Shown piece by piece: positions 1-57,373 of a DNA stretch of 64,000 nt. The stretch's first letter is position 1, and every line of letters begins with the position of its first letter. Below the pieces are notes generated by a model. It made no database searches. It was not told where the DNA came from and worked only from the letters and a program-made list of their open reading frames with translations. Location of the stretch: IMG/VR virus record IMGVR_UViG_3300027996_002186, positions 310,001 to 374,000 of that record, one strand, 5' to 3'. The translations under genes were made by a program, and so were the position numbers.

Positions 1-162
1 TGGTTTAATATCTGTCAGTTCAACTGATATTAAATCATCTGATATATCTCCACCAACCTTTGATATTACGCTTATAAGATCCGGTGAAAAATAAAGAAAA
101 GATTCATTCACTAAACTCTCTAGTAACAAGTCTTCTTTAAATTTATTATACTTACTAATCAT
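1..162 (-). CDS. Partial ORF (runs off window start); putative virion internal protein, paralog of 52390..53685
   Basis: Manual translation from CAT at 160-162: MISKYNKFKEDLLLESLVNESFLYFSPDLIS...; capsid-targeting-like leader; AATATATA motif at 168-175; not in ORF track. Confidence 0.65.
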   Translation of the reverse strand, partial: MISKYNKFKEDLLLESLVNESFLYFSPDLISVISKVGGDISDDLISVELTDIKP

Positions 163-228
163 AATTCTATATATTAACTTTGTTGATTCAAAATATTTGC
201 TTATCTTTATAAATAACAAAATATAAAT

Positions 229-714
229 ATGGAACTTATAAATTTAAAGAAACCTTTCGTTATAGTACTTATTGGACCGCCACTTTCAGGTAAAACAACT
301 TGGATAAGAAATAACTTTCCAGATACGGAAGTTATTAGCCGAGACGAAATACTTATGGAGGTTTATGGTTCCAGAAATTACTCAGAAGCTTTTAAGAATG
401 TGGACCAAAGAAATGTTGATAAAGTTCTTAAAGAAAGATTGGTTAATGCTGATAAAGAAATGAAGAATACTATTATTGATATGACTAATATGAGTTCTAA
501 AAGAAGAAGAGGAAACTTAGACTACTTCTCAGATGATTATTTCAAATTAGGAGTAATATTCCCAATTTTAAAGGATGAGGAATATGAAAGAAGAAATAAA
601 AAGAGAATTGAAGAAGAAAATAAAGACTTACCAATGCACATCGTTAAAAGGATGATATCACAATATCAAAATATTAAAGAAGATGAAGGATTTGATAAGA
701 TAATTTCTTTATAA
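229..714 (+). CDS. P-loop kinase, AAA_33 / polynucleotide-kinase-like domain
   Basis: Walker A GPPLSGKTT, SRDEI, IIDMTN motifs typical of Pnk-type kinase domains. Confidence 0.75.
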   Translation: MELINLKKPFVIVLIGPPLSGKTTWIRNNFPDTEVISRDEILMEVYGSRNYSEAFKNVDQRNVDKVLKERLVNADKEMKNTIIDMTNMSSKRRRGNLDYFSDDYFKLGVIFPILKDEEYERRNKKRIEEENKDLPMHIVKRMISQYQNIKEDEGFDKIISL

Positions 715-732
715 AGAAACTGAAAATATATT

Positions 733-762
733 ACTTTAAGGTGATTTATATTGCCTTAAAGT
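733..762 (+). terminator. Hairpin terminator after the kinase gene
   Basis: Inverted repeat ACTTTAAGG / CCTTAAAGT. Confidence 0.5.
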
Positions 763-763
763 C

Positions 764-793
764 TTGCCGTTTAAAATAATTTCCGTATATTTG
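764..793 (+). promoter_or_regulatory. Bacteroidota housekeeping-sigma promoter
   Basis: TTG (764-766), 19-nt spacer, TATATTTG (786-793), matching TTG-N19-TAnnTTTG. Confidence 0.7.
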
Positions 794-818
794 TTATACA
801 CTAAAAAACAAACACAAT

Positions 819-1199: not shown

Positions 1200-1706
1200 A
1201 TGCGTATTAAAGGGGTATATGAATTTTTCGATGATGATGATCTAAAATCACAATTCGAGATCCCACATCTAAGAGGTGAAATGGGTGACGAAATTAGTAA
1301 ATGGAAAACATTTGCTGAACCTTTAGGTGATGAAACGCCAAAATCCTTTCTAAATAAAATAGCATTTAAATTTCCCGTACTTAAAAGTTTTCACCAAGAT
1401 GTGAAAACAACTGATGATAATGTTGAAATATATTGCTTTTATGATTACTCACAAGAAGTTTGTGAAAATGGTAATGAATATTATGTGCAGTTAGTTATAT
1501 CATATGATATAAAAACCAAAGAATACTTCATAAACATTGTTATAAGAAACAAAGATGATTACGAAGACCAAAGTAAATGGAAGAGGTATGATGTTGAAAC
1601 TAAAGATATTACTCAAGCTTATGGATTAATCGAATCCTTTTTAACTAGTTGTATAAAACTAAATGTTATAACTCCTGAGCAAAAATCTGCTTTACTATCA
1701 AACTAA
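1200..1706 (+). CDS. Hypothetical protein (late-promoter operon)
   Basis: ORF; TATATATA at 1188-1195; overlaps the next start codon. Confidence 0.6.
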   Translation: MRIKGVYEFFDDDDLKSQFEIPHLRGEMGDEISKWKTFAEPLGDETPKSFLNKIAFKFPVLKSFHQDVKTTDDNVEIYCFYDYSQEVCENGNEYYVQLVISYDIKTKEYFINIVIRNKDDYEDQSKWKRYDVETKDITQAYGLIESFLTSCIKLNVITPEQKSALLSN

Positions 1707-2143
1707 TGAAACATATTAAAACATTCGAAAGTAAATGGAATTTACCTCAAAATAAGAGGTTAATAGTTCAGGGATCATTTAATAAATCTAACTTTACTCC
1801 AGCAACTGATAAAGTTAATTTATCACAAATATACCAATATATTATAATTGAAACCGAGGGAGGTAATATTATAACAATTGATAAGAGTGGTGTTCTTGAT
1901 ATTTGGATGAATGATGATTCTGGTGTTACTTCTGCTATCAGAAAAGCACTCGATAATATAAGTGACGAAACTTATGATGATATATATTTTGAGGATTTCG
2001 AAGATTTTAAGTCATATGAATATATAGTGAATTTGTTAGATTACAATCCTATAAACTTCCAAGAGATTGAAAATATTTTGATAGACCACGGTTATAGTGT
2101 TGATAACATATGGGGAGCTATTGATAATTTACCACAAAAATAA
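1706..2143 (+). CDS. Hypothetical protein with capsid-targeting-like leader
   Basis: Starts MKHIKTFES. Confidence 0.6.
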   Translation: MKHIKTFESKWNLPQNKRLIVQGSFNKSNFTPATDKVNLSQIYQYIIIETEGGNIITIDKSGVLDIWMNDDSGVTSAIRKALDNISDETYDDIYFEDFEDFKSYEYIVNLLDYNPINFQEIENILIDHGYSVDNIWGAIDNLPQK

Positions 2144-2149: not shown

Positions 2150-2656
2150 ATGAAATACATAAAACCATATATTATTTTTGAATCAAAAGAATTATCTGAA
2201 TATTTTGATATTTTCATAAAAAGTGATATCATCGATGATGATAATTACGTAAATAGTTTACGTCAAAACAATCTTTGGTTTAGAGAAATAAGTCTTCAAG
2301 ATTTCATGGGGAGTAAATATAAAAATTTCAGACAAAAGAGCGATTCAGTAAGAAGAAAGGAATTTAAAAAGTATACCGTCTCATCTACACCATATTCTCG
2401 TGCTAGACAGAAAGAAAATTGTTTATGTGTGCAAATTGGATCATCCTTTAATATAGATGATGTTGAAATTTATATCAGAAGAATGTTAGATTATGCTAAT
2501 GAAAATGGATATTCTTATGAAGTTAGAAAAGAATTACAAGCTAGTCGAAAAAGTATAGATATAACAAATCTAATTAATCGAAGACTCAAACGTAAGAACA
2601 ACAGGGTTAATACACAGAAGATTCTATCTATTCAAATTTTATTCTATAAAGAATAA
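2150..2656 (+). CDS. Hypothetical protein with capsid-targeting-like leader
   Basis: Starts MKYIKPYIIFES. Confidence 0.6.
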   Translation: MKYIKPYIIFESKELSEYFDIFIKSDIIDDDNYVNSLRQNNLWFREISLQDFMGSKYKNFRQKSDSVRRKEFKKYTVSSTPYSRARQKENCLCVQIGSSFNIDDVEIYIRRMLDYANENGYSYEVRKELQASRKSIDITNLINRRLKRKNNRVNTQKILSIQILFYKE

Positions 2657-2708
2657 ACTTTTACATAATCAAATACTATATACTATCTACTCATTAAAAA
2701 AGTAGAAA

Positions 2709-2985
2709 TTAATTACAAATTAATTTGGTAGAACGAAAGTCTATCCGTATATTTGTAAGACAATTAAAGAGAACCAGTAGTTTGCGGTTTGTTCCATAAA
2801 ACTATAATACGTCATACTTTAATTGTTTTTTGAAAATAATTATAAATAAATTAGGTAGAAGAGAAAAGTCTCCTTATATTTGTAAGAACAAACAAAGACA
2901 ATGAAGTCTTCAAAAAATAAAAAAAGAAATTATAAATAAATTAGGTAGAACGAAAAACTCTACTTATATTTGTAAGACAAACAAA
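2709..2985 (+). promoter_or_regulatory. Three tandem near-identical Bacteroidota-type promoters
   Basis: Repeat unit AAATWAATT(T/A)GGTAGAA..N..TATATTTGTAAGA; -7 boxes TATATTTG at 2748-2755, 2875-2882 and 2965-2972, each 20 nt after TTTG/TTAG. Confidence 0.75.
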
Positions 2986-2992
2986 ACAAAAT

Positions 2993-3088
2993 GGTCGGTT
3001 CGTCTAGTGGCTGGTTTTCTCTTGAGAGAATCTTAGGACGGTAACCTTTTCGGGTTACAGACAGAGTGTTCGATTCCTCTACCGACTA
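2993..3088 (+). tRNA. Atypical tRNA-Glu-derived element 1 (D-loop hairpin insertion, non-canonical anticodon arm)
   Basis: Acceptor GGTCGGT/ACCGACT; D-stem GTC/GAC with TAGTGG; ~22-nt hairpin insert 3011-3033; anticodon arm GTAACC-TTTTCG-GGTTAC; T-loop TTCGATT with a bulged stem; no encoded CCA. Confidence 0.7.
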
Positions 3089-3090
3089 CA

Positions 3091-4020: not shown

Positions 4021-4028
4021 TTTTATAT

Positions 4029-4123
4029 GGTCAGTTCGTCTAGTGGTGGGGTCTCTTTTAAGATACTCCGAGGACAGTAACCTTTTCGGGTTATAAACAT
4101 TGGTTCGAATCCAATACTGACTA
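4029..4123 (+). tRNA. Atypical tRNA-Glu-derived element 2 (same architecture as element 1)
   Basis: Acceptor GGTCAGT/ACTGACT; D-loop hairpin insert GGGGTCTCTTTTAAGATACTCC (4048-4069); anticodon arm GTAACC-TTTTCG-GGTTAT; canonical T-arm ATTGG-TTCGAAT-CCAAT. Confidence 0.72.
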
Positions 4124-4201
4124 CAAAGTTTTCGTAGTGGTTAACTTCTCTTTAATTAGAGGGTCTGTTTTGAACAGTTTTGATTACCTAACATCATCTA
4201 T

Positions 4202-4239: not shown

Positions 4240-4286
4240 ATTTATATACAATTTGTAAACTTTTCCTTTTAAAATAAAATAATAGT

Positions 4287-32763: not shown

Positions 32764-34046
32764 AATTTTAATAATATTTTTAATGTATAATCTTCTATAT
32801 CCCTATCATCATCGAATTGTCTATCTCCTCTACTCTTCCCGAAAATAACCTCACCGTGGTCCATTGTTGGTAATATTGTTGGTAAAACTTCATCTAACCC
32901 AGATTCTAATTTCCTTAAATTCATCGGTACTGATTTATACGGGTACATACCAACAATACCCTGATCAGTATTACCTATATCAATATAAACACAAGGAACA
33001 TACATAGTTAATATGTTTGCTGGGCTATAATTACGCAATTTTTGTAAATCATATTTATTTTTAACTATGATATCACTATTTCTAACAACCTCATAGTTCA
33101 TAATATCAAAGTTAACACATTGGAATTTTTTATCAGTTACATATTCCTCAGCTTCATCTTGTCTGATATAAACATCATTTTTATACCCACCTATTTTAAA
33201 TGTCGGTAACATAATTGATCTAATTATATCTCTCATTATCATATAAAACCTACTATCATCTTCTGTATCATAAACAGGCATTGTTCCATTATATTTATTC
33301 TTAATTGGTTCATCTTTTTTATAATAATCACCATAAGTTATAGCAGTTGTGACCCATTTACCCTTTTCAGTTGGTATTTCATCCCATATATCATATAGTC
33401 TATCATTAACATAATCTATATCAACTTTCTTCATAGAATTCCAAGTTTTAGTCAAATAATCTTCGATTATACCATACCATTTATCACCAATAAAATGGTT
33501 TGTCCATTTTTTAATATCAGACTCACTTAATTTATTATTCTTCATATTCTGATAATATAAATCATTATAAAAATCAAAAATGCTATATCTTTCTTCGTTG
33601 GATTCATTTAAACTCTCATCCATTGAATTTAATAAATCACCATAATCATCCTCTGAATAAATAAGTAATGATATACCTGGATAACTAAACTCTTCACCAC
33701 CATAAACATCGATGAATCTATCTAATGACATCCAATCTTGTTCCTTTGTAACTTCTACATCAACACCATATCCTTCATCAGCTCTCCAAACATAATCTTC
33801 TATTCTTTTAACAGCATCCTTTATATCATCCCATCTCCAAATCTCATCATTCTTTCTATAAATACCAACACATACCGATCTTATTGAGTCTGAAAACATA
33901 GGTGGTGTGTAATTAGTCTCATCTATAACTACACCAAATCCATCATCAGATAATTCTAATACAATATCCTCTAATTCTCTTTTTAGATTGGAGAATCTAG
34001 TAGAGTCTTCTGATTCAAATAGTTTATATTTCTTTAAGTATTTCAC
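32760..34046 (-). CDS. Putative virion internal protein
   Basis: MKYLKKYKLFES leader; DIVLELSDDG module; internal ESLNES linker. Confidence 0.6.
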   Translation of the reverse strand: MKYLKKYKLFESEDSTRFSNLKRELEDIVLELSDDGFGVVIDETNYTPPMFSDSIRSVCVGIYRKNDEIWRWDDIKDAVKRIEDYVWRADEGYGVDVEVTKEQDWMSLDRFIDVYGGEEFSYPGISLLIYSEDDYGDLLNSMDESLNESNEERYSIFDFYNDLYYQNMKNNKLSESDIKKWTNHFIGDKWYGIIEDYLTKTWNSMKKVDIDYVNDRLYDIWDEIPTEKGKWVTTAITYGDYYKKDEPIKNKYNGTMPVYDTEDDSRFYMIMRDIIRSIMLPTFKIGGYKNDVYIRQDEAEEYVTDKKFQCVNFDIMNYEVVRNSDIIVKNKYDLQKLRNYSPANILTMYVPCVYIDIGNTDQGIVGMYPYKSVPMNLRKLESGLDEVLPTILPTMDHGEVIFGKSRGDRQFDDDRDIEDYTLKILLKF

Positions 34047-35353
34047 TTTCTAATTACTTTAATTCTTTCTGTTTGATACTTCATTATATCAACATCTTGA
34101 TGCTCTGTTAATAAATCAACAATACCTTGATACATTTGTATTGTTATTTTACAATCTGTAATAGCATCGTGATAACCACTCATATTAATACCAAGTACTG
34201 GTCCTATTTTAGACATAGATGATGATATTAATCCATTATCTCTTGGTGAAGTACCAATAAAATCTATTTTCTCTTGAAAAGATGGGTCAGTCTCAGCTAA
34301 CTTCTGTAACAATGGTAAAAAGTATAATTGTATCAACATCTTAGTATCAAATACTTCATTCACAATCTTATTACCATATCTACCACTCAACATAGCCATA
34401 TCAAATGCCGCGTTTTGTGCAATTAATAAACAAGGTTCGTATTCACCTATGAATTTAAAGAAATCATTAACAACAGTTTCTTCGTCTTTGTACTTATATC
34501 CGCCACTACCATAATGGTTGAATCCTAAAACCCATTTAGTTCTATCTTCTGGTTCGTTATATTTAGACTTAGTATCATTTGTTAGTTTTATTTTCTCATC
34601 AAATTGTCCTAACTCCTTGAATTCGTTATTATCAAAATCACATTCAGTTACTAAACAAGATACTTGTGTTAATTGTTCTTTCTTTGGACCATTTAATCCT
34701 GTTGTTTCCACATCAACAAAAATCCAAGGCATATCAGTTTTAGAATCTAACCAAGAAAGTATTTCGGGTATTGATTTATACCACATCTTATTTTCATTTA
34801 TTGATTCTGAAACGTTATTAACTTCAAATTTGAATTCCTTACCATCAGCATGTGAATAAGTAACTTTATCAATGTTCTTAACATTATATTTATAATCGGG
34901 TTTTAGATATTTCTTACCCATACCTTTTTTAACATAAGCAATTGTTATATGTGGTTTATATTCTGGGTATTCATTTGAATTTGGTAATTCGGATAATTCA
35001 TCAAAAAGATTTTGTAATGATCCCTGTGGGTTAATATTGAATTTAACAACATCAAATTTATCATTCTCAAATATATCAACACCATCAACTTCTATATTTA
35101 TATCACCTTCAAAGGTATCGAATATAGACTTAACTTCCTCATTTGATACTTCCTTATGTAAACCATATAAAAGTGTAAGGTGTGGTCTCTTTTGTACACC
35201 ATACGTTGAATCACCGTCACTTTCATAGATGTCTTCTGGGTCTATCCAAGATGTTATTTCTTCCCAATTATTAACTGGTACGTCAACCATAACACAACCA
35301 TATTCATAGCCGTTTATTGATTCTTTAATAAATTCTTTATATTTCTTTAACAT
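34043..35353 (-). CDS. 2H phosphoesterase + DEDDh 3'-5' exonuclease fusion
   Basis: PHLTLLY and PHITIAY (two HxT motifs); FVDVETTG, AQNAAFD, HDAITD; MLKKYKEFIKES leader; ESINE linker between the domains. Confidence 0.8.
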   Translation of the reverse strand: MLKKYKEFIKESINGYEYGCVMVDVPVNNWEEITSWIDPEDIYESDGDSTYGVQKRPHLTLLYGLHKEVSNEEVKSIFDTFEGDINIEVDGVDIFENDKFDVVKFNINPQGSLQNLFDELSELPNSNEYPEYKPHITIAYVKKGMGKKYLKPDYKYNVKNIDKVTYSHADGKEFKFEVNNVSESINENKMWYKSIPEILSWLDSKTDMPWIFVDVETTGLNGPKKEQLTQVSCLVTECDFDNNEFKELGQFDEKIKLTNDTKSKYNEPEDRTKWVLGFNHYGSGGYKYKDEETVVNDFFKFIGEYEPCLLIAQNAAFDMAMLSGRYGNKIVNEVFDTKMLIQLYFLPLLQKLAETDPSFQEKIDFIGTSPRDNGLISSSMSKIGPVLGINMSGYHDAITDCKITIQMYQGIVDLLTEHQDVDIMKYQTERIKVIRK

Positions 35354-35923: not shown

Positions 35924-36193
35924 TTAGTTTAAGTTGTAGTTAAATATTGGTGTTTCATCTTCATAATCATCATCCTCAGCGTCTGTATCGAAATCAAATC
36001 CCATACTTACTAAGTAACTCATAACTTCATCAGTTAATTTCATGTTAGCATTTCTTTCTTCCATATAGTTGTCAAACATACCAACAGTAAATTGACCCCT
36101 TTCTTCTCTAAGTTTTATTAACTTAGGTAATAGGTCTTTAGCAATGTCTTCTGCTAAGTTTGAATGTGATTCAAATGTTTTTAAATGCTTCAT
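35924..36193 (-). CDS. Small protein with capsid-targeting-like leader
   Basis: MKHLKTFES. Confidence 0.6.
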   Translation of the reverse strand: MKHLKTFESHSNLAEDIAKDLLPKLIKLREERGQFTVGMFDNYMEERNANMKLTDEVMSYLVSMGFDFDTDAEDDDYEDETPIFNYNLN

Positions 36194-36620
36194 TGTCTAA
36201 CTCTGTTTTAATTTTCTCAAATGGTTTGTGGTATTGAGAGTCAATTACTTCAAAGAAGTTTTTCCAACCATCTCCCCTATAATTAAACAACAAGGTACTT
36301 TCTTTGTCTTTACTATTAAATATGTATCTTAACCTTGAACCTACTTTTTTCCGGGTGTAGAAATTAAGCAATGGAATTTCAGCCATTAATTGGTTTGAAC
36401 CCATACCCTTAATGAACTCAACTTCAATCGGTCCAGTAATATATTCTTCTTCTCTAGGTGGTGAATCTGGATGAAAAATCGTTGCTCCGTATCTTCGGTT
36501 TAGGTCATCGATATTAATTTTATAATCGAAATTAAGATTCTTCGTCAATATATTTGTTTCTACCTTTTCACCACCATAAGATGATTCGTTAAATTTTTCA
36601 AATTTATTTAAATATTTCAT
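36171..36620 (-). CDS. Protein with capsid-targeting-like leader
   Basis: MKYLNKFEKFNES. Confidence 0.6.
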   Translation of the reverse strand: MKYLNKFEKFNESSYGGEKVETNILTKNLNFDYKINIDDLNRRYGATIFHPDSPPREEEYITGPIEVEFIKGMGSNQLMAEIPLLNFYTRKKVGSRLRYIFNSKDKESTLLFNYRGDGWKNFFEVIDSQYHKPFEKIKTELDNEAFKNI

Positions 36621-36907
36621 TGTTTAATCTTTGTAACTTTTTTACCACCGAATGGTCCACTTAAATGTTTTAAGTTCCAAGATGGTATGAATTTCTTATT
36701 AGCTTTTTCATAATCTTCATAAGATTCAATGCCTGTATCAATAGGATTATGAATATATTGTATATTAGCACCTTCTTTATTCATATCAGAGATTCTATCA
36801 CCGATATCAGTACCTTTAGTTAACTTTCTTAACCTTTTAAGTTGGTCAACAGTGTGTTGCCTTGGTAGTGATTCGTTTATCTCACTAAATCTTTTTAAGT
36901 ATTTCAT
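36617..36907 (-). CDS. Protein with capsid-targeting-like leader
   Basis: MKYLKRFSEINES. Confidence 0.6.
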   Translation of the reverse strand: MKYLKRFSEINESLPRQHTVDQLKRLRKLTKGTDIGDRISDMNKEGANIQYIHNPIDTGIESYEDYEKANKKFIPSWNLKHLSGPFGGKKVTKIKQ

Positions 36908-37353
36908 AATTTGTTTATTTCATCTATTTTTACTTGTAGTGTATCTATTTTTGATTTTAGACCACTTGTTATATCTTCTTTAGATATTTTAGTGACAATC
37001 CAATCACCATAATAATCACCACCATCATAAACTCTATCATCTTTTGGATCCATAATTATTTTGAAAAACTCTCCTTCAAAAAACAAAAAATTTCCTAAAT
37101 CTGATTTATACATTTTTTGAATTCTGTAACCATCATCATTAATTATAAAGACCTTACCTTCTTCTTTAGCTCTTTTCATACAATATTCAGCTAAACTTTC
37201 TAAGTTAATTCCTGGTGTTCTTGGATTTGACCAAACCTTTTTAGATATTTCTTTATATTCATCTTCTCTTGAAGGAACATTACCATATTCAGATGCTTCA
37301 CCATTATCAATATAATCTTTAACATTTTCGTTAAATTTCTTTAAATGTTTCAT
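36904..37353 (-). CDS. Protein with capsid-targeting-like leader
   Basis: MKHLKKFNEN; AATATATA at 37374-37381. Confidence 0.6.
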   Translation of the reverse strand: MKHLKKFNENVKDYIDNGEASEYGNVPSREDEYKEISKKVWSNPRTPGINLESLAEYCMKRAKEEGKVFIINDDGYRIQKMYKSDLGNFLFFEGEFFKIIMDPKDDRVYDGGDYYGDWIVTKISKEDITSGLKSKIDTLQVKIDEINKL

Positions 37354-41131: not shown

Positions 41132-41548
41132 CTACGGTTTTATTATGATATCTTTCATTAGTTTACCCCATTTGAATTGTATCATACCATAACATAATAT
41201 TTTACCATCATATTCATAATCAGGTTCTTTAGCTAAATCATATCTTATATCTGAGTATTTATCTTGTATTCTATTAATACAAGTTTCGATTTCTTTATAT
41301 ATTTCTAAATTTTTTTCGGTGTTTTTTATAAAGTCTGATACTTTACCATGTGCCGTACCGATACTAAATCCAGTTAATTTTTTATTTAATTTGTGTAAAG
41401 TGTTTAGGTCAAAATTAACATAACACTCTTTACCACCACTATATTCAAAATCAGATCCATCATCTATAAAATCAGCAAAAACTAATTTTATATAATCTGA
41501 TACTTCATCATTATCAACAGATTCGTTATATTTATTTAGATGTTTCAT
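41132..41548 (-). CDS. Protein with capsid-targeting-like leader (start reassigned)
   Basis: MKHLNKYNES at 41548; AATATATA at 41553-41560. Confidence 0.6.
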   Translation of the reverse strand: MKHLNKYNESVDNDEVSDYIKLVFADFIDDGSDFEYSGGKECYVNFDLNTLHKLNKKLTGFSIGTAHGKVSDFIKNTEKNLEIYKEIETCINRIQDKYSDIRYDLAKEPDYEYDGKILCYGMIQFKWGKLMKDIIIKP

Positions 41549-48128: not shown

Positions 48129-49394
48129 ATGAAGAAATTGTCAAAATATTTAGAATTTATAAATGAAAGCTCAGATTACAAGGGTTATTCAATTCCTTCT
48201 TATAAGGAAGCTGTTGAGTTATGCTCAAAAAATGCTGCTTTTTATGAATCTAAAATGATTGTTGATGGATTTAATGTATCTGTATTCAATTACAGACTAA
48301 CAAGTTATAAGGATTTTGCTAACCCTCTTGATCACAAACCAGAATTAAAAGGTTATGAAATGAGGGGGTTAACATTCATTTTTAATGAAGATGGTACATT
48401 ATTCAATAGATATGTGTTGCTTGAAAAATTCTTTAATATAAATCAAGTTCCGGAATCAATGTATTCCATTGTTAAGGATTATAAAATAAAATATGTTAAT
48501 AATAAAGAAGATGGTTCAATAGCGACATTCGTGAAATTACCAAATGGTAAAATTGTTGGTAAATCTAAAATGGGGTTTGATAATGACCAATCAAATGGTA
48601 TTAATAGAATATATCAAAATGATACTGAAATAAAGACATTAGTTAACTGGTGTTTAGATAATGATATAATACCTATATTTGAATATGTCGCTCCTCATAA
48701 TAGAATTGTATTGAGATATACACAAGAGGAATTGATACTTTTAAGATTAAGAGATAATAAAACCGGTAAACATATCGATATACAAGACCACTTAGATAAG
48801 ATTGGTTCGACTAAGATTGCTCCATTCGAAGATGATCACCAAGGTAACTTGGATAAGTTAATTGAATTGGTTGCTAATCAAGTTGATAAAGAGGGATGTG
48901 TTGTACAAGCTGAGGATAGTGAAGGTAGAGATTTCTTCTTCAAATTAAAGACTCCTTGGTATTGTGAGCGTCATGGTTTATTAACTAATGATATTTACAG
49001 AGAACACATTATAATAGGATATATCTTAGATGATAAGATTGATGATATTCTTAGTCAAATACCAGAGGATGAAGTTGAAGCACATACAAGAATAAATAAG
49101 ATTATTGTAATAGTTAAGAGAGCTATAGATGATAAGATGGAAGATATCAAGAAGTCATATCAGGTATTTCTTGATATGGGGGAAGACAGAAAAGAGTATG
49201 CTCTTACACATATGAAGGCAGAACCTAACTTCTGTTATGTTATGAATTTAGCAAACGGTAAAGATCTTTATGATATAGCTAAAGAGCACGTAAGAGATAA
49301 GACTAAGAGGTTGATGATATCAAGAGATTGGTTACAGAAAATAGACCCAACACTTTTCTTCCAAGACCCGGAAGAAGATGAAGAGAATAATTAA
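48129..49394 (+). CDS. rnl1: T4 Rnl1-family RNA ligase
   Basis: LEKFFN, KEDGS (motif I), EY..P.NRIV, EGCV, FKLKTPWY; leader MKKLSKYLEFINES. Confidence 0.85.
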   Translation: MKKLSKYLEFINESSDYKGYSIPSYKEAVELCSKNAAFYESKMIVDGFNVSVFNYRLTSYKDFANPLDHKPELKGYEMRGLTFIFNEDGTLFNRYVLLEKFFNINQVPESMYSIVKDYKIKYVNNKEDGSIATFVKLPNGKIVGKSKMGFDNDQSNGINRIYQNDTEIKTLVNWCLDNDIIPIFEYVAPHNRIVLRYTQEELILLRLRDNKTGKHIDIQDHLDKIGSTKIAPFEDDHQGNLDKLIELVANQVDKEGCVVQAEDSEGRDFFFKLKTPWYCERHGLLTNDIYREHIIIGYILDDKIDDILSQIPEDEVEAHTRINKIIVIVKRAIDDKMEDIKKSYQVFLDMGEDRKEYALTHMKAEPNFCYVMNLANGKDLYDIAKEHVRDKTKRLMISRDWLQKIDPTLFFQDPEEDEENN

Positions 49395-49432
49395 AGAGAG
49401 TTTTTAACTCTCTTTTTTTATATATACTATTA

Positions 49433-50116
49433 ATGGAATATCTACAAACATATAAACTATTTGAAAGTGATTCTTCAATGCCGGAATTATCCGAACAAGA
49501 ATTAAAAGATGATGAACTTTATAGTTATATAGGTGATATATGTCAAGAATTAAAAGATGATGGGTTAGAAGTTAGAATAAAAATAAGTGATTGTTCTAAA
49601 GTAGGTAATATGTTATGTGATGATGTGGTTTCTATCTGGACAAACGTTCCATCATCAATTGATATATCTAATAGGATTAATGATATTATTGAATATAGCG
49701 AGATAAAGGAAACCTATGATAGATTGATTGAGTATTTTGCATCAAAGGGGTATGATAATTATGAATTGAAAAGATTTAATTTTGAAGATGGTTCTATTTA
49801 TTTGGATTTTGATGGTGATGAGAATAAAAAATCAGAATCATTTAAGATAGAATTTTACAAATCAGTTAATCATATAATAGAATCTAAAACGACATCTAAA
49901 TTAAAATTTAACAAACAATCTAGAAAGAAAGGTGCTAAGACTGATGTTTATAACGTAGTTAAGAATGGTACTACAATAGGTCAAGTTAAATGGTATAGTA
50001 GATTACGTGGTTATGGTTTCTTGCCACCTACTGGCGATGAAGCAGAAGTAAAGGAATTTGTTAAAGAAGTTTCTAGACTACGTAGAGAAGAAATGAAAAA
50101 GAACAAAAAGAAGTAA
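49433..50116 (+). CDS. Putative virion internal protein
   Basis: MEYLQTYKLFES leader; DICQELKDDG module; TATATATA at 49419-49426. Confidence 0.55.
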   Translation: MEYLQTYKLFESDSSMPELSEQELKDDELYSYIGDICQELKDDGLEVRIKISDCSKVGNMLCDDVVSIWTNVPSSIDISNRINDIIEYSEIKETYDRLIEYFASKGYDNYELKRFNFEDGSIYLDFDGDENKKSESFKIEFYKSVNHIIESKTTSKLKFNKQSRKKGAKTDVYNVVKNGTTIGQVKWYSRLRGYGFLPPTGDEAEVKEFVKEVSRLRREEMKKNKKK

Positions 50117-52389: not shown

Positions 52390-53685
52390 TTAATCATGAC
52401 ATTGTAAATCACCATCATCATCCATATAACAACCATCGGTATCTCTGAATGTTCTATTTATATATAAATCACCATCTCTATCATTAGTTAACGACCCCAA
52501 CCAATGATCGAAGCTTAAATAACACATAGTATCCATATAAGGATATCTAGTCCATTTACCACCACTGCCGGTTAACTTAACAACCAAGACAGCAGATTTA
52601 CTAGTTGAACCATTTGTGATTTTTTCACTTGGATCCATGGTTTGTGATTTCTTATACCACCAGTTATTCTTCTCAGCATATTGTTTGAATAATTCAACAT
52701 CACTATCATTCGTTGTGTATATTCTATCCATAAATGTACCTTCTGTTCCGTCAATAGTAGCTTTCCATAATAACGCTCTACCCTTTATTTGATCTGACTT
52801 AAACACACCATTACCTTTAATTTCACCATCATCACCATATAAAATAACCATTTGAATTTCTTTTGTGTTGTTACAATACATATCAAAAAATTCACTAGGT
52901 GATTCAGCCATACAAGAACTATTCAAAACACCTCCACCATCAACATATCTATCTTCATTGCTATTATCATACCAATATGCTATATCTTCACCTTTAACAA
53001 TATCGAATTGTTTTAATACGTCCTGTGCGAAATCAAATGTGGCTTTATATGTATTTGTAAATTCTTCTATGTCTTTATCAAGAAATTCTAACCCAGATGC
53101 TTTTAACACAGCTCTAACTAATCTACCAACTTTAATTTTATTTCTTGATGTAGACCATATTTTAGAATTTTCTGATGAATCTGTTTCTTCCAATGATTCT
53201 TTATTAAGAACTGTTTTTCTAGGTGAGTCGGTATCATCTTCTTCAAATATAACATATATCTTACCAGATGACTCACTAATAGTTTCTCCTAAAATAATAC
53301 CAATAGTTTGGTCTACGGGTGCCCAAGGTTCTCCTGATGGCTTTTCATAACCAAGAGCTTCGAAAAGTTTATTATTACCATTGGAGTGTGTTAAATACCT
53401 TTGTGAATCTATAACTTCCCATAATTGTGGTTTATCCTTTAATATTTCTTGTGCTTTTCTATCTGGTGTGAATGAAACAGCATCCTTAGCATCAGTAATA
53501 TCAATATAGTTGTGTGAAATTTTCACATCTTTAGAATAAAGATTCAATAATTCGGATGCTATCTTATTTGATTTCATCTTATTCAATAAGTTAATAAACT
53601 TTTTAGAAAAAACCATTTTAGATTCTAGTAATAGCTCATAAGCTACTTTTTCTGTTATATAATCATTATATTTTAATAAACTCAT
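52390..53685 (-). CDS. Conserved jumbo-phage hypothetical protein (start reassigned), putative virion protein
   Basis: MSLLKYNDYITEK leader; SSCM, GRALLW, FMDRIY, YPYMDT motifs; AATATATA at 53712-53719. Confidence 0.6.
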   Translation of the reverse strand: MSLLKYNDYITEKVAYELLLESKMVFSKKFINLLNKMKSNKIASELLNLYSKDVKISHNYIDITDAKDAVSFTPDRKAQEILKDKPQLWEVIDSQRYLTHSNGNNKLFEALGYEKPSGEPWAPVDQTIGIILGETISESSGKIYVIFEEDDTDSPRKTVLNKESLEETDSSENSKIWSTSRNKIKVGRLVRAVLKASGLEFLDKDIEEFTNTYKATFDFAQDVLKQFDIVKGEDIAYWYDNSNEDRYVDGGGVLNSSCMAESPSEFFDMYCNNTKEIQMVILYGDDGEIKGNGVFKSDQIKGRALLWKATIDGTEGTFMDRIYTTNDSDVELFKQYAEKNNWWYKKSQTMDPSEKITNGSTSKSAVLVVKLTGSGGKWTRYPYMDTMCYLSFDHWLGSLTNDRDGDLYINRTFRDTDGCYMDDDGDLQCHD

Positions 53686-54036: not shown

Positions 54037-54100
54037 TTGATAAGTGATAATTATCACTACTCAATTTCATCACTTACACCACCATAAACAACATATAATA

Positions 54101-55060
54101 TTATAATGATATTAGCATTTCTACTAATTCTTTTTGCGGAAAGCAATCATACTTATCTTTACGAACATTTGTGTGTGTCCATAACCCGAATTGGTTTGCA
54201 TTATACGCATCTTCATTAAATTCAAATGCTTCTGCAGGTGGCATTCCATATCTCAATAATTTAGGCAATCCATGTACCAAGTCCATTTTAGGATATATGT
54301 CTTTTAGATGTAGTAATAACAATCTAAGACTTTCTATTTGTTTAGTTGTGTATGCGTGCCAATATTGATGGCCTCTGAATTCGTAACCTAGATCACAAAC
54401 AAATTCTGGCATAACCTCGGTATTAACATATGTGTAGAATTTACCGTTTTTCTTAGTAAGATATCCGAAGTTACATAACTCAACTCCACCAGAAAACTTT
54501 GAAATGTTAAAACCACCGACCTTTCCTAGATGCCACCCTAGATAATTATCAGGAAAACATTCCACCGTAACTCCATCATATTTAGCTTCATTTCCTTTTA
54601 CATTAGAACCCCCGATTACGTACTGTGTAGCAACTCTACCTCTAGAATCTTTATTCCAACTATTAACTGTGTTATATGGATTATCCCAACCAGCGGTGTG
54701 GTGTATGAAAAAACCAAGTGGTTCAATCTTACCATAATCTCTTACATATTCATCTGAATCCAAATATACCTTATCAATAACTAGACCATCCTTTGTTGTG
54801 TATTTACCATGATACGCTAGCTTATCATCTTTATCGTTAGATGGTTCTTCATTTTTAGTTGTTGATGATTGATCAGTATCAATACCAGCAGCTTCCCATG
54901 TTTTCCTTCCAACTATACCATCAGCAACTAATCCGTTGTCTTTTTGAAATTGTATAGTTAACCTTTCCGTTCCAGAACCGAATATACCATCTGGTGTCGT
55001 TTTTAAAACTTGTTGCCATTCAACTACTTCAGATCCTCTGTCTCCTTTTCTAATTGTCAT
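54101..55060 (-). CDS. Peptidoglycan-binding + Amidase_2 endolysin
   Basis: PG-binding repeats DGIFG/DGIVG; HHTAG, VELCN, THTNVR, KYDCFP. Confidence 0.85.
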   Translation of the reverse strand: MTIRKGDRGSEVVEWQQVLKTTPDGIFGSGTERLTIQFQKDNGLVADGIVGRKTWEAAGIDTDQSSTTKNEEPSNDKDDKLAYHGKYTTKDGLVIDKVYLDSDEYVRDYGKIEPLGFFIHHTAGWDNPYNTVNSWNKDSRGRVATQYVIGGSNVKGNEAKYDGVTVECFPDNYLGWHLGKVGGFNISKFSGGVELCNFGYLTKKNGKFYTYVNTEVMPEFVCDLGYEFRGHQYWHAYTTKQIESLRLLLLHLKDIYPKMDLVHGLPKLLRYGMPPAEAFEFNEDAYNANQFGLWTHTNVRKDKYDCFPQKELVEMLISL

Positions 55061-55093
55061 AATATTTTTTATTTTTTAATAATTTTATATACT

Positions 55094-56125
55094 TCATAAA
55101 GTGTTTAACATTTCTATCATCTCCTTCTGTGGGAATATATCAAATTTACCTGTTCTTACTTGTGTATTGTTTCTAAGACCACCATGACTAAACCACTTAA
55201 CATCATACTCAAACCATTGTTCGTCATAAATACCAGTCTCAATTTGTATATCCCATCTTTTTTTCAAATATAAAATAAGTTTTCTAGTACTTTCTATTTG
55301 AGCATCTGTATATCTTTCATAATGTGTATATCCTCTGAAAGGTTTATCTAACTCAACAACATCCTCATCATTAATAGGTTGATTAACATAATTATAATAT
55401 CTACCATCTTTACCTAATGTCAATGGTCCATAATTACATATCTCAATACCAATAGATTTTGAGTTTAATGCTTTACTTTTTGTGTGTGATATATCTAAAT
55501 GATAAGCCCAGTGTCTATCATCAAATGATCTTAATACTTTACCATCCCATAATATATCATTTTTAGATGAAGAACTTCTACCTATTACAAATTGTGTTCC
55601 AACTCTTAATGGTTTCGGATTACCCTTTTTATCTAAAATAGCATTACCCTTTTTATCTTTTTGGAAATCTCTTTCCCAACCACCGATAGTCCAATCTGGT
55701 CTAGACCCACCAGCAGTGTGGTGTAACCAAATTGTATCTTTTACTGTTTCTGTTTTATAATATTCATCATCTTCTAAAAAACAATCATATATTGTTAATG
55801 AATCCTCGCCGATATAAGATATTTTAAATGGTATATTTTCATTTCTAGGAGTTGGAGTGATAACAACATCAGTCTCAATACCCTTTGACTCTTTTTCTTT
55901 TTTATTTTCTAAATGGTTAGTTATTTGACTCCAAGTTTGTGGACCAATAACACCATCAGCTTTTATACCAACAGACCTTTGATAATTAGTAACTGATACT
56001 AATGTATTTTGAGTGAAGTTCCCATCAATTATATTTTTGTGATATCCATATTCTTTTAATCTAGTTTGTACCCAACGGACATCATCACCGGACATTTTCA
56101 GCATTAAAATTCTCTTTAGTTTCAT
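55094..56125 (-). CDS. Second PG-binding + Amidase_2 paralog (Zn-ligand His replaced)
   Basis: DGNFT/DGVIG; HHTAG, IEICN; GLRNNTQVR where the paralog has GLWTHTNVR. Confidence 0.8.
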   Translation of the reverse strand: MKLKRILMLKMSGDDVRWVQTRLKEYGYHKNIIDGNFTQNTLVSVTNYQRSVGIKADGVIGPQTWSQITNHLENKKEKESKGIETDVVITPTPRNENIPFKISYIGEDSLTIYDCFLEDDEYYKTETVKDTIWLHHTAGGSRPDWTIGGWERDFQKDKKGNAILDKKGNPKPLRVGTQFVIGRSSSSKNDILWDGKVLRSFDDRHWAYHLDISHTKSKALNSKSIGIEICNYGPLTLGKDGRYYNYVNQPINDEDVVELDKPFRGYTHYERYTDAQIESTRKLILYLKKRWDIQIETGIYDEQWFEYDVKWFSHGGLRNNTQVRTGKFDIFPQKEMIEMLNTL

Positions 56126-56640
56126 AAACTATTATTATTTTTATATCTTTCTTTTTGCTTATTATCTAAATATGCTTTCAAATCAGCATAAGTAACATTT
56201 CCTGGGTTTTGAAGTATATTTTCAGCAATACCATCTGCCTTAACTTCAAGCTTCTTAAGCTCTTCATTCTTAACCCTTTCCTCATACTGATCTTCAACAT
56301 TCTTTAGAATGTGTCCTAGATAAAAATCTATATTATTTTTGATTACCATAATTTTATCGAAAGTATATAAAAATTCCTCGAAGGTATCACCATAATAAAC
56401 AGCGAAGGTATCATCTTTTATAAAATGATCAGCATAGAATTTTATATCACCAACATTTCCTTGGCCATATATCGTAGCTTTGTATTGATTAAAATAGAAA
56501 TAAGTGAATTTATCGTTTGGGTTAAAAGTTCTTTTACCATTTTTCTCAACAGTAGCAACTAATCCAAGATTTATCCTAAAATAACTTGATCTTTTAAATT
56601 CTGTTATAGTTTGATATGATGAAACAACGTGTAAAGCCAT
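56122..56640 (-). CDS. Hypothetical protein
   Basis: 172-aa ORF heading the amidase operon; AATAAATA at 56645-56652. Confidence 0.55.
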   Translation of the reverse strand: MALHVVSSYQTITEFKRSSYFRINLGLVATVEKNGKRTFNPNDKFTYFYFNQYKATIYGQGNVGDIKFYADHFIKDDTFAVYYGDTFEEFLYTFDKIMVIKNNIDFYLGHILKNVEDQYEERVKNEELKKLEVKADGIAENILQNPGNVTYADLKAYLDNKQKERYKNNNSL

Positions 56641-56732
56641 AGGTTATTTATTAAAAAAAATGTGCTTCCTAATGTATATGATTAAAAATAATGATAATTA
56701 TCAACGATTGTAGAATTTTATGTGTGAAAATA

Positions 56733-57302
56733 TTACTCAGTCTCGATTGCAAACTCATCACTATCATCACCAAATTTATCATCAAGTTCTATCTTTAAAT
56801 CGATTAAGAACTCCTCATCTATATCTTTGATATCAATATTTTTACTAATTTGACCAATTATTTCAGTAAGTTTATCTAAGCTATATTTCTTAAATTTAAT
56901 ATAACATTTTTCTATATCATCACTATCGAAATTTTTCTCTGGATCTTTAGGTATAGCTTCTTTAATATCTATCATTAATATAAGAGTATATGTATTTTCA
57001 TCATCCATAAATTTAATTGTTAATGAGTCATACATTTTAGAATATTTTGATACTTCTGAACTTAGTAAAGAAACACCCAAATCTTCAAAGGTCATTTTAT
57101 TACTATCCTTCATTGATATTTTTTTAATCTTTGTTGGATCTTCTTCTGCTTCTTCTTCTGGGTTATCTATATCACCATCTTGAAAAACAAACATTTTATC
57201 TATCTTTAATTTGATTTGTGATAATGCCGTTGCTATATAACTCTCAGGAGTTTCAGCAAATAACTCTTCTTTTATAAAATCTAAATATTTTCTAACTATC
57301 AT
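56733..57302 (-). CDS. Acidic protein with capsid-targeting-like leader (start reassigned)
   Basis: MIVRKYLDFIKEE at 57302; AATATATA at 57307-57314. Confidence 0.6.
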   Translation of the reverse strand: MIVRKYLDFIKEELFAETPESYIATALSQIKLKIDKMFVFQDGDIDNPEEEAEEDPTKIKKISMKDSNKMTFEDLGVSLLSSEVSKYSKMYDSLTIKFMDDENTYTLILMIDIKEAIPKDPEKNFDSDDIEKCYIKFKKYSLDKLTEIIGQISKNIDIKDIDEEFLIDLKIELDDKFGDDSDEFAIETE

Positions 57303-57373
57303 ATCATATATATTAAAATAATATAACCTTTTTATCATTTGTTATATTAATATTTAATCACTATATTTATAAA

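What the first reader, a model, noticed from the sequence alone, without database searches (positions are those of the whole stretch)
1..57314. N-terminal capsid-targeting-like leader on about 15 unrelated proteins
Seen: the leaders MISKYNKFKE (162-), MKHIKTFES (1706), MKYIKPYIIFES (2150), MKYLKKYKLFES twice (32763-, 34046-), MLKKYKEFIKES (35353-), MKHLKTFES (36193-), MKYLNKFEKFNES (36620-), MKYLKRFSEINES (36907-), MKHLKKFNE (37353-), MKHLNKYNES (41548-), MKKLSKYLEFINES (48129), MEYLQTYKLFES (49433), MSLLKYNDYITE (53685-) and MIVRKYLDFIKEE (57302-). Known: T4 internal proteins carry a ~10-aa capsid targeting sequence (MKTYQEFIAE) that gp21 removes after [I/L]-x-E. Inference: this phage packs a large, diverse cargo into its head and injects it with the DNA.
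Basis: partly seen in the sequence, partly recalled or inferred. Interest (0 to 1): 0.8.

Follow-up and report, generated by a model that had tools for sequence, protein, structure and literature searches.

The report
Capsid-targeting-like leaders in a huge phage
About one gene in six in this stretch of a huge (over 480 kb) phage genome starts with the same 8-14 residue tag, which closely resembles the tag phage T4 uses to load proteins into its head, so this phage may carry a very large protein cargo into the host cell, although nobody has yet shown this experimentally.

Summary
All 15 leaders are at the stated coordinates; two start with TTG or GTG. The motif occurs only at N-termini: 14 of 82 window genes and 0 of about 18,600 internal positions.

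The window belongs to a 483-kb IMG/VR phage contig of the Mahaphage clade. In its 635-kb relative LR745206, 84-90 of 917 genes carry the leader. Equally AT-rich relatives (PTm1, LR756500, Lak) have essentially none.

Synonymous codons vary freely, so selection acts on the peptide. The invariant positions are Leu/Ile-4, Phe/Tyr-7 and a Glu at 8, 9 or 11. They match the residues that direct targeting and gp21 cleavage in T4's capsid targeting sequence.

LR745206 has a T4-type portal, capsid protein and gp21-family protease. The protease is fused to a scaffold made of 14-residue YSEYIAEN repeats, which copy the leader motif.

Best reading (about 0.65): these are T4-type targeting propeptides, expanded to roughly 10% of the proteome. 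Tagged proteins include an RNA ligase and an Acb1-like phosphoesterase-exonuclease. Packaging, cleavage and injection are untested.

The parts
1..162 (-). 5' part of a gene that runs off the window. Leader MISKYNKFKE is at 133-162.
   Evidence: The LR745206 orthologue (416232-418202, 656 aa) starts MISRYNKFRE. A TAATATATA-like motif lies at 168-175.
1706..2143 (+). 145-aa protein of unknown function. Leader MKHIKTFES is at 1706-1732.
   Evidence: 11.4 bits. No Pfam match. No LR745206 homologue.
2150..2656 (+). 168-aa protein of unknown function. Leader MKYIKPYIIFES is at 2150-2185.
   Evidence: 7.4 bits. No Pfam match.
31606..32763 (-). 385-aa protein with a TTG start. Leader (M)KYLKKYKLFES is at 32728-32763. 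An internal junction motif ESINES lies at 32326-32343.
   Evidence: Shares its post-leader domain with 49433-50116 (E 4e-6).
32760..34046 (-). 428-aa protein with a GTG start. Leader (M)KYLKKYKLFES is at 34011-34046. An internal junction motif ESLNES lies at 33600-33617.
   Evidence: (12.5 bits). The LR745206 orthologue starts MKYLTKYKLFE with ATG.
34043..35353 (-). 436-aa fusion of a 2H phosphoesterase (LigT/Acb1-like) and a DEDDh exonuclease. Leader MLKKYKEFIKES is at 35318-35353. The junction motif ESINEN at 34790-34807 lies between the two domains.
   Evidence: Pfam 2_5_RNA_ligase2 7.8e-8, RNase_T 3.8e-6, Acb1 9.2e-6 (just below its cut-off). PADLOC DEDDh 2.5e-11. Both HxT motifs are present.
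35924..36193 (-). 89-aa protein. Leader MKHLKTFES is at 36167-36193.
   Evidence: 14.9 bits. The LR745206 orthologue starts MKYLKTFES.
36171..36620 (-). 149-aa protein. Leader MKYLNKFEKFNES is at 36582-36620.
   Evidence: 9.1 bits.
36617..36907 (-). 96-aa protein. Leader MKYLKRFSEINES is at 36869-36907. The body equals the C-terminal domain of a two-domain LR745206 protein.
   Evidence: the window's 'SEINES|LPRQH' aligns with the internal 'DNINES|LPRQQ' of LR745206 451902-452537.
36904..37353 (-). 149-aa protein. Leader MKHLKKFNEN is at 37324-37353.
   Evidence: 16.8 bits, the best in the window.
41132..41548 (-). 138-aa protein. Leader MKHLNKYNES is at 41519-41548.
   Evidence: 16.2 bits. The LR745206 orthologue has MKYLKKYNES.
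48129..49394 (+). T4 Rnl1-type RNA ligase, 421 aa. Leader MKKLSKYLEFINES is at 48129-48170.
   Evidence: Pfam RNA_lig_T4_1 2.7e-21. Window residue 27 aligns with residue 8 of the T4 Rnl1 chain 2C5U. Nearly all of 120 orthologues keep Y-x-x-F-[ILV]-x-E-[SNG] before a variable linker. AlphaFold2 gives a helix at 2-11 with low confidence and a loop at 12-24.
49433..50116 (+). 227-aa protein. Leader MEYLQTYKLFES is at 49433-49468.
   Evidence: 7.8 bits. The LR745206 orthologue starts MKHLKSYQLFES.
52390..53685 (-). 431-aa phage-only protein. Leader MSLLKYNDYITE is at 53650-53685.
   Evidence: The orthologue starts MILLKYNEYITE. The Atlas gives only viral hypothetical proteins, with a weak GNAT-like C-terminal half.
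56733..57302 (-). 189-aa acidic protein. Leader MIVRKYLDFIKEE is at 57264-57302.
   Evidence: 6.5 bits. The orthologue starts MKIRKYIEFITED. A TAATATATA-like motif lies 4 nt upstream.

Best explanation
The leaders are T4-type capsid targeting sequences. Each is a short amphipathic N-terminal helix. The proposed mechanism has three steps.
1. The hydrophobic residues at positions 4 and 7 (or Y-x-x-F-I in the second form) dock the protein onto the scaffolding core of the assembling prohead. They probably do so by imitating the scaffold's own 14-residue repeat.
2. A gp21-family prohead protease then removes the leader by cutting after the conserved Glu (hydrophobic-x-Glu, followed by Ser, Asn or another small residue).
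3. The freed proteins stay in the head with the DNA and would enter the host with it.

Shown here:
- the motif, its strict N-terminal position, and selection at the peptide level;
- T4-type head genes, with conserved catalytic residues in the protease, in a close relative;
- scaffold repeats that carry the same motif.

Inferred: docking, cleavage, retention in the virion and injection.
For: (1) Position and selection.
- The motif is only N-terminal, in the window and in LR745206. There, 84 N-terminal HMM hits compare with 7 'internal' ones that all begin with Met and so are mis-called starts.
- Synonymous codon use in the leaders matches the genome, for example AAA/AAG 79/21 against 74/26 and GAA/GAG 71/29 against 72/28.

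(2) Match to functional T4 data.
- In the 55 strict type-A leaders of LR745206 (selected with a regex that already requires L/I at 4 and F/Y at 7), Glu falls at 8, 9 or 11 in 50 of 55.
- In T4 IPIII, residues 4 and 7 direct targeting and residues 8 and 10 direct processing (PMC9026906).
- The T4 record gives IPII/IPIII as MKTYQEFIAE and IPI as MKTFKEF.... The window has MLKKYKEFIKES and MKHLKKF...

(3) Machinery in the relative. Its DNA is 80.5% identical to the window across the aligned 47% of window 26000-50000.
- Portal_T4 2.7e-57 and Gp23 1.8e-26; terminase 4e-50.
- A protease-scaffold gene lies directly upstream of the capsid gene. The profile of its N-domain hits the T4 gp21 structure 5JBL at E 1.3e-7, with the catalytic His and Ser conserved.

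(4) Scaffold link.
- The T4-CTS pattern [YF]xx[FY][ILV]xE[SNGA] occurs 29 times in the LR745206 proteome, against 6.4 expected.
- Eleven are N-terminal leaders, 8 are scaffold repeats, 3 are in a small scaffold-like protein, and 7 are singletons, which is about the chance level.
- The scaffold holds 23 hydrophobic-x-E-[SAN] sites against 3.5 expected (P 3.5e-12).

(5) Other likely cleavage sites end like the leaders.
- Capsid protein...HSINE|NAY, conserved in 76 relatives.
- Protease C-terminal boundary: [LIV]NE|S, aligned with T4 ITE|S.

(6) The leader is an add-on.
- The RNA ligase has about 19 extra residues compared with T4 Rnl1. The leader is conserved, the linker is variable, and the leader is predicted as a detached helix.
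- A domain junction 'NINES|' in LR745206 equals the leader end 'EINES|' in the window.

(7) The cargo looks like T4 internal proteins. It is diverse and mostly without known domains: 3 Pfam families in 40 leader proteins against 26 in 40 length-matched controls.
Against: - There is no experimental evidence of any kind. No cultured phage carries the leaders; PTm1, the cultured relative, has none.
- The head module was seen in a relative, not in the window or its contig.
- Roughly 90 tagged proteins per genome would be far more cargo species than in any studied phage.
- Leader proteins are on average acidic (median pI 5.0 against 5.7), unlike the basic IPII and IPIII.
- The class with Glu at residue 8 (MKHLKTFE|S) has no hydrophobic residue three positions before the cut.
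- The shared TAATATATA promoter-like motif also precedes nucleotide-metabolism genes, so it gives no evidence of late expression.
- Leaders are no more conserved between orthologues than the rest of the protein (62% against 64-66% identity).
Confidence: 0.65

Rival explanations
1. The leader is a peptide tag for some other machine, not the prohead. It could be a docking helix for the phage's own chaperones (the window encodes Hsp70, DnaJ and a ClpB-like AAA+ protein). It could also be an N-terminal degradation tag that times the removal of these proteins, or a tag that gathers them at a replication or assembly site.
For: Selection acts on the peptide and the motif is strictly N-terminal. The phage encodes its own chaperone set. 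Tagged proteins include cytoplasmic-type enzymes, namely an RNA ligase and a phosphoesterase-exonuclease. The proteins are acidic.
Against: This does not explain several findings: the same motif is the repeat unit of the protease-linked scaffold; the leaders end like the probable cleavage sites of the capsid protein and the protease; and the conserved positions coincide with the functional residues of the T4 CTS.
Confidence: 0.2
2. The conservation is really at the DNA or RNA level. In this view a promoter-plus-start cassette spread by recombination, or it is a start-region sequence needed to translate leaderless or near-leaderless mRNAs in a host that lacks Shine-Dalgarno pairing.
For: In half of the leader genes a TAATATATA-like motif ends only 4-9 nt before the ATG. 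That holds for 26 of 33 leader genes that have the motif, against 82 of 196 other genes. No Shine-Dalgarno sequence is visible.
Against: - Synonymous codons vary as in the rest of the genome.
- Many leader genes lie inside operons with no motif upstream.
- Invariance falls on Y, F, I and E while neighbouring residues vary in 120 RNA ligases.
- The same peptide is written with GC-rich codons in contigs of 42-53% GC (few cases).
- Equally AT-rich relatives lack it.
Confidence: 0.08
3. The proteins are one paralogous family and the leader is simply their shared N-terminus, or the pattern is a chance product of composition.
For: Three window proteins do share a post-leader domain. Leader genes cluster: 25 adjacent pairs against 8.8 expected.
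Against: The other leader proteins show no similarity once the leader is removed, and they include a bona fide Rnl1 ligase and a 2H/DEDDh enzyme. The motif has zero internal occurrences, and AT-rich control genomes have none.
Confidence: 0.04

Closest known systems
Capsid targeting sequence of T4 internal proteins IPII/IPIII (MKTYQEFIAE, cut by gp21 after Glu-10)
   Same: It is N-terminal and 10-14 residues long. The second leader form (MLKKYKEFIKES, MKKLSKYLEFINES, MIVRKYLDFIKEE) has the same Y-x-x-F-I-x-E spacing. It is attached to unrelated proteins. The related genome has T4-type portal, capsid and gp21-family protease genes.
   Different: The motif is shifted by 1-3 residues from the Met. 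It is followed mostly by Ser or Asn rather than Ala. It is used on about 10% of genes rather than a handful, including enzymes of 420-440 residues. Function is untested.
T4 IPI propeptide (MKTFKEFTSTTTPVSTITE|A)
   Same: The main leader form MK[HY][LI]Kx[FY] matches IPI at M1, K2, hydrophobic-4, K5 and F7. IPI is the best T4 hit of the leader HMM, although the hit is weak (3.4 bits).
   Different: The IPI propeptide is 19 residues and is cut at ITE-19. Here the conserved Glu comes at residue 8, 9 or 11.
Long propeptides of head and ejection proteins in phiKZ-like giant phages (SPN3US, 201phi2-1)
   Same: The prohead protease is related to gp21 and cuts after Glu. Many internal head proteins are processed, about 50 head proteins in all (PMC5694885).
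   Different: Those propeptides are mostly over 100 residues, use an A/S-x-E motif, and show no shared short N-terminal consensus. Only 8 of about 50 SPN3US head proteins are processed.
Cargo-loading peptides of encapsulins
   Same: A short peptide tag directs diverse cargo into a shell with the HK97 fold (my own knowledge, not tested here).
   Different: These tags are usually C-terminal, are not removed by a protease, bind the shell rather than a scaffold, and have no sequence similarity to the leaders.

Membership tests
T4-type capsid targeting sequence (CTS) propeptides | Short propeptide (10-20 residues) at the extreme N-terminus | tested here: met
   Leaders are 8-14 residues long and always start at Met-1. 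There are no internal copies in the window and none in LR745206 once mis-called starts are allowed for.
T4-type capsid targeting sequence (CTS) propeptides | Hydrophobic or aromatic residues at positions 4 and 7, which are the targeting determinants in IPIII | tested here: met
   All ten type-A leaders in the window have L/I at position 4 and F/Y at position 7. The 55 strict LR745206 leaders were selected by a regex that requires these residues, so they are not an independent test. The second leader form keeps Y-x-x-F with the same spacing. The functional data come from PMC9026906.
T4-type capsid targeting sequence (CTS) propeptides | Ends in a gp21-type cleavage motif (Leu/Ile-x-Glu, cut after Glu) | tested here: inconclusive
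   Glu is at residue 8, 9 or 11 in 50 of 55 strict leaders, followed mostly by S, N, E, A or G. [FILY]-N-E and [IL]-F-E fit a hydrophobic-x-E rule, but the Glu-8 class (x-F-E) does not. Actual cleavage was not tested.
T4-type capsid targeting sequence (CTS) propeptides | The genome encodes a gp21-family (S77) prohead protease and a T4-type head | tested here: met
   This was seen in the close relative LR745206, not in the window. Portal_T4 2.7e-57, Gp23 1.8e-26, protease profile against PDB 5JBL 1.3e-7, with catalytic His and Ser conserved.
T4-type capsid targeting sequence (CTS) propeptides | Carried by otherwise unrelated proteins | tested here: met
   All-against-all BLASTP after removing the leaders finds only one trio that shares a domain.
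T4-type capsid targeting sequence (CTS) propeptides | Tagged proteins are present in virions with the leader removed, and the tag is sufficient to package a foreign protein | not testable with these tools
   This needs virion proteomics or reporter fusions. No cultured member of the leader-rich subclade was found.
Sec, Tat or lipoprotein signal peptides | Hydrophobic core of 7-15 residues after a basic N-region, or a twin-Arg motif or lipobox | tested here: not met
   The sequences show this directly. Leaders are charged and amphipathic (for example MKHLKKFNES), with no hydrophobic stretch, no RR motif and no Cys.
Long propeptides of phiKZ-like giant phages | N-terminal propeptides mostly over 100 residues that end in A/S-x-E | tested here: not met
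   Leaders are 8-14 residues, and the residue two positions before the Glu is hydrophobic rather than Ala or Ser (PMC5694885).

The most novel reading that the evidence does not exclude
About a tenth of the proteome of these phages (about 90 proteins in the 635-kb relative, 15 in this window) is loaded into the prohead by a short tag that copies the scaffold's own 14-residue repeat. The phages in question have genomes of 480 to over 600 kb and infect Bacteroidota. The phage would then inject a ready-made early proteome with its DNA. That proteome would include an RNA-repair ligase and an Acb1-like phosphoesterase fused to an exonuclease, and so could blunt host defences before any phage gene is transcribed.
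Probability: 0.35. Interest if true: 0.85.

Novelty: new variant of a known kind. Interest (0 to 1): 0.72.

Why it matters
If the leaders work like the T4 CTS, three things follow.
- The largest known phages would use part of their big heads to carry dozens of different proteins, most of unknown function, into the cell. That would change how we read their genomes: a simple N-terminal motif would mark the injected set.
- The motif would point to a large pool of candidate counter-defence and host-takeover proteins.
- It would give a testable rule for how cargo recognises the scaffold, namely that the tag imitates the scaffold repeat.

My searches of the paper library found no report linking huge phages to capsid targeting sequences.

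Tried and rejected
- Expression timing. The TAATATATA-like motif precedes structural genes in LR745206. In the window it also precedes the RNR, DnaJ, adenylate kinase and 5'-3' exonuclease genes. It cannot be called a late promoter, so I dropped it as evidence.
- Orthologue conservation. Leader identity between the window and LR745206 (62%) is no higher than in the rest of the protein (64-66%). This is uninformative.
- Cleavage-motif avoidance or enrichment inside leader proteins. Observed 1-2 sites against 3-6 expected in LR745206, which is not significant.
- PTm1 as an experimental proxy. This cultured relative has the same protease-scaffold gene but no leaders in 95 kb sampled.
- Function of the cargo. 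Pfam, PHROGs, PADLOC and the ESM Atlas gave almost nothing beyond the RNA ligase and the 2H/DEDDh enzyme. There was only a weak GNAT-like lead for 52390-53685.
- Co-variation of leaders with scaffold repeat type. The result is suggestive: genomes with leaders all have YSEYIAEN repeats, while PTm1 and LR756500 have neither. Only six genomes were partly sampled.
- A single-sequence PDB search with the protease failed. A six-sequence profile succeeded.
- I did not retrieve the window's own head module. Its contig was not among the 80 loci returned.

Full report
**Observation.**
The window is 29% G+C and densely coded.
- Two of them (32763-, 34046-) start with TTG and GTG, in TTGA/GTGA overlaps with the preceding stop codon.
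- The one at 162- belongs to a gene that runs off the window.

The leaders come in two forms.
- Type A is MK[HY][LI]Kx[FY], followed by Glu at residue 8, 9 or 11 (MKHLKTFES, MKHLKKFNEN, MKYLKKYKLFES).
- Type B is M-x(1-4)-K-[YF]-x-[EDK]-[FY]-[IK]-x-E (MLKKYKEFIKES, MKKLSKYLEFINES, MSLLKYNDYITE, MIVRKYLDFIKEE).

The type A core is at residue 2 of 10 of 82 genes and at none of 18,581 internal positions. Type B is N-terminal in 4 genes and never internal. With leaders removed, only three proteins (31606-32763, 32760-34046, 49433-50116) share a domain; the rest are unrelated.

**Where the window comes from.**
- Window 31494-37617 is 100% identical to a piece of IMG/VR contig IMGVR_UViG_3300027996_002186, which is 483,262 bp long.
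- The nearest public genome is LR745206.1 (634,780 bp), 80.5% identical across the 47% of window 26000-50000 that aligns.
- LR745206.1 is one of the four largest curated genomes of Al-Shayeb et al. 2020. It belongs to the Mahaphage clade, and its host is predicted to be Bacteroidetes (PMC7162821).

I fetched all of LR745206 and used it as a genome-wide stand-in.

**Scale and specificity.**
- Among 917 ORF-genes of LR745206, a strict pattern finds 64 leaders at residue 1.
- A profile HMM finds 84 N-terminal hits at 6 bits or more. The 7 'internal' hits all begin with Met, so they are mis-called starts. That makes about 90 genes, or 10%.
- The 55 strict type A leaders were selected with a pattern that already requires L/I at position 4 and F/Y at position 7. 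Among them, Glu is at residue 8, 9 or 11 in 50 of 55.
- Synonymous codon use in the leaders matches the genome-wide use. Examples are Lys AAA/AAG 79/21 against 74/26, Glu GAA/GAG 71/29 against 72/28, and five different Leu codons. Selection therefore acts on the peptide.
- A 27-nt degenerate pattern for MK[HY][LI]Kx[FY]NE hit at least 120 places in IMG/VR. Most were in low-GC contigs, many of 100-640 kb. ORFs around these hits carry further leaders.
- Related phages that are equally AT-rich lack the leader: PTm1 0/130 ORFs, LR756500 0/128, Lak-B5 at most 1/84. The motif is not a product of composition.

**The machinery it would need.**
LR745206 has T4-type genes for:
- terminase (phmmer 4e-50), sheath and tail tube;
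- portal (Portal_T4, 2.7e-57) and major capsid protein (Gp23, 1.8e-26).

Directly upstream of the capsid gene lies a 707-residue gene. Its first 170 residues or so weakly match T4 gp21 (Pfam S77 E 0.005, below the cut-off; BLASTP E 0.002). A profile of this domain from six related phages hits the solved T4 gp21 structure 5JBL at E 1.3e-7. The invariant His (GEFDHP) and Ser (VSSRA) align with the gp21 residues that are replaced in that inactive crystal form. The authors of PTm1 annotate the homologue as 'prohead core scaffolding protein and protease'.

**The scaffold link.**
The rest of that protein consists of 14-residue tandem repeats, NIAYSEY[IL]AENLDK. Their core, Y-S-E-Y-I-A-E-N, has the pattern of the T4 CTS and of the type B leaders.
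- Across the whole LR745206 proteome the pattern [YF]xx[FY][ILV]xE[SNGA] occurs 29 times, against 6.4 expected from shuffling.
- Eleven are N-terminal leaders, 8 are in the scaffold, 3 are in an 83-residue scaffold-like protein with the same 14-residue period, and 7 are singletons, which is about the chance level.
- Sixty-three protease-scaffold genes from IMG/VR relatives each hold 7-9 copies.
- The scaffold also holds 23 hydrophobic-x-E-[SAN] sites against 3.5 expected (P 3.5e-12). It is the only protein with three or more hydrophobic-N-E-[SAN] sites.

The leader therefore looks like a single copy of the scaffold repeat, with the same candidate cleavage site.

**Other probable cleavage sites end like the leaders.**
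- The capsid protein N-terminus reads ...WMSEYAEFHSINE|NAYANASNVSGMG. This stretch is conserved in 76 relatives and in more distant Mahaphages; PTm1 has IINE|S.
- The boundary between protease and scaffold is [LIV]-N-E-[SA] with an invariant Glu. It aligns with T4 gp21 ITE|S. C-terminal self-cleavage of such proteases is known (PMC5694885).

**Comparison with T4, from data and papers.**
- The T4 record gives IPII and IPIII as MKTYQEFIAE|A and IPI as MKTFKEFTSTTTPVSTITE|A.
- The first 10 residues of IPIII suffice for packaging. Residues 4 and 7 mainly determine targeting, residues 8 and 10 determine processing, and Asp at residue 10 blocks processing but not targeting (PMC9026906).
- All T4 internal head proteins join the core through a CTS. 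T4 and giant-phage proteases cut after Glu (PMC5694885).

Type B reproduces Y-x-x-F-I-x-E. Type A reproduces the M-K-x-hydrophobic-K-x-F of IPI and keeps the two targeting positions.

**The leader is a detachable add-on.**
- The window's Rnl1-type RNA ligase (Pfam 2.7e-21) aligns from its residue 27 to residue 8 of the T4 Rnl1 chain 2C5U.
- In nearly all of 120 orthologues (66% identity or more) the leader keeps Y, F, [ILV], E and [SNG]. The 5-12 residues that follow vary in sequence and length.
- AlphaFold2 gives a helix at residues 2-11 with low confidence, a loop at 12-24, and then the enzyme.
- The window gene 36617-36907 equals the C-terminal domain of a two-domain LR745206 protein. The internal junction DNINES|LPRQ of that protein aligns with the window's leader end SEINES|LPRQ.
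- The three large window proteins at 31606-35353 each carry ES[IL]NE[SN] at a domain junction. In 34043-35353 the motif lies between the 2H phosphoesterase and DEDDh exonuclease domains. These may be internal processing sites or relics of gene fusion.

**What the tagged proteins are.**
- Only the RNA ligase and the 2H phosphoesterase-exonuclease have known domains. For the latter: LigT family 7.8e-8, T4 Acb1 family 9.2e-6 (just below its cut-off), both HxT motifs present, DEDDh 2.5e-11.
- Forty of the largest LR745206 leader proteins hit 3 Pfam families. Forty length-matched non-leader proteins hit 26.
- Leader proteins are more acidic (median pI 5.0 against 5.7, p about 1e-5).
- Leader genes cluster along the genome: 25 adjacent pairs against 8.8 expected.

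This diverse, fast-changing and mostly unknown set resembles the T4 internal proteins, which are described as a varied set of anti-defence proteins that share only the CTS (PMC3012670).

**Weaknesses.**
- Nothing here shows packaging, cleavage or injection.
- The head module was seen in a relative, not in the window.
- About 90 cargo species would be unprecedented.
- The Glu-8 class does not fit a strict hydrophobic-x-E rule.
- Acidic cargo differs from IPII and IPIII.
- The TAATATATA-like motif is not specific to a gene class.
- Leaders are not better conserved than the protein bodies.
- The link between having leaders and having YSEYIAEN scaffold repeats rests on six partly sampled genomes.

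**Rivals.**
- Another peptide-tag function, such as a chaperone client tag, a degradation tag or a localisation tag, stays possible (0.2). It does not explain the scaffold and cleavage-site parallels.
- A DNA- or RNA-level start cassette (0.08) is contradicted by the codon data. It is worth noting, though, because the promoter-like motif sits only 4-9 nt before the ATG in most leader genes that have it.
- Paralogy or chance (0.04) is excluded for most members.

**Verdict.**
The best explanation (0.65) is a T4-type capsid targeting propeptide that imitates the scaffold repeat, expanded to about a tenth of the proteome in a subclade of huge Bacteroidota phages. I file it as a new variant of a known kind. 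My searches of the paper library found no earlier report of it.

Noticed in passing
window 3612-4019 (+), inside the ORF-free gap 2657-4286: A full-length match to GOLLD RNA (Rfam RF02032, 278 bits, model positions 1-416 of 416). No tRNA gene lies anywhere in the window.
   Followed up: partly
window, e.g. 1187-1195, 35360-35367, 41553-41560, 48116-48124, 49418-49426, 57307-57314 (short spacing) and 38437-38444, 47014-47022, 62543-62550 (long spacing): A promoter-like motif T(T/A)ATATATA shows two spacing classes. It ends either 4-9 nt before the ATG, mostly at leader genes, which suggests leaderless or near-leaderless mRNAs. Or it ends 19-40 nt before the ATG, at RNR, DnaJ, adenylate kinase, exonuclease and, in LR745206, all head and tail genes checked. 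No Shine-Dalgarno sequence is visible.
   Followed up: partly
window 32326-32343, 33600-33617, 34790-34807; LR745206 451902-452537: An ES[IL]NE[SN] motif sits at the domain junctions of three adjacent leader proteins. In LR745206 such a junction corresponds exactly to the leader end of a separate window gene (36617-36907). This suggests polyprotein-like internal processing or repeated fusion and fission of leader-tagged genes.
   Followed up: partly
LR745206 198546-200669 (L015:38546-40669) and 460435-460686: The prohead protease is fused to a scaffold of about 12 tandem 14-residue repeats (NIAYSEYIAENLDK). An 83-residue protein elsewhere in the genome carries three or four units of the same repeat. 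It has no counterpart in the window.
   Followed up: partly
window 5339-7453, 42898-43989, 44909-45466, 50461-52341: The phage encodes its own chaperone set: a ClpB/ClpA-type double AAA+ protein, DnaJ and Hsp70 (Pfam). A probable GrpE was judged by eye only. None of them carries the leader. They might refold proteins after passage through the tail, but that is speculation.
   Followed up: partly
window 34043-35353 (-): This is a fusion of a 2H phosphoesterase with both HxT motifs and a DEDDh exonuclease, behind a leader. The phosphoesterase gives a near-threshold match to the T4 anti-CBASS Acb1 family. It is a candidate injected counter-defence enzyme.
   Followed up: partly
window 25553-25759 (+); LR745206 93266-93520: A 68-residue window ORF weakly resembles T4 gp23/gp24 (phmmer E 0.0012 and 0.056). 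An 84-residue LR745206 protein reads MRYLKPYKKFIE|NADGSSTSGMGAVSSAQP. That is a leader joined to a copy of the capsid-protein segment that follows the putative cleavage site.
   Followed up: no
window 1200-1706 (+): A possible sixteenth leader: MRIKGVYEFFDDDD (MSIKRLYEFFDDED in LR745206), with the promoter-like motif 4 nt upstream. Asp stands where the Glu would be. In T4, Asp at that position blocks processing but not targeting.
   Followed up: no
window 8185-25572 (+): A long same-strand run of about 20 genes whose N-termini look like glycosyltransferases, sugar-nucleotide epimerases/dehydratases and methyltransferases. This was judged by eye only and not checked against Pfam.
   Followed up: no
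LR745206 control set: One non-leader protein carries PKD domains plus a type IX secretion C-terminal sorting domain (Por_Secre_tail, 1.9e-12). This fits a Bacteroidota host.
   Followed up: no
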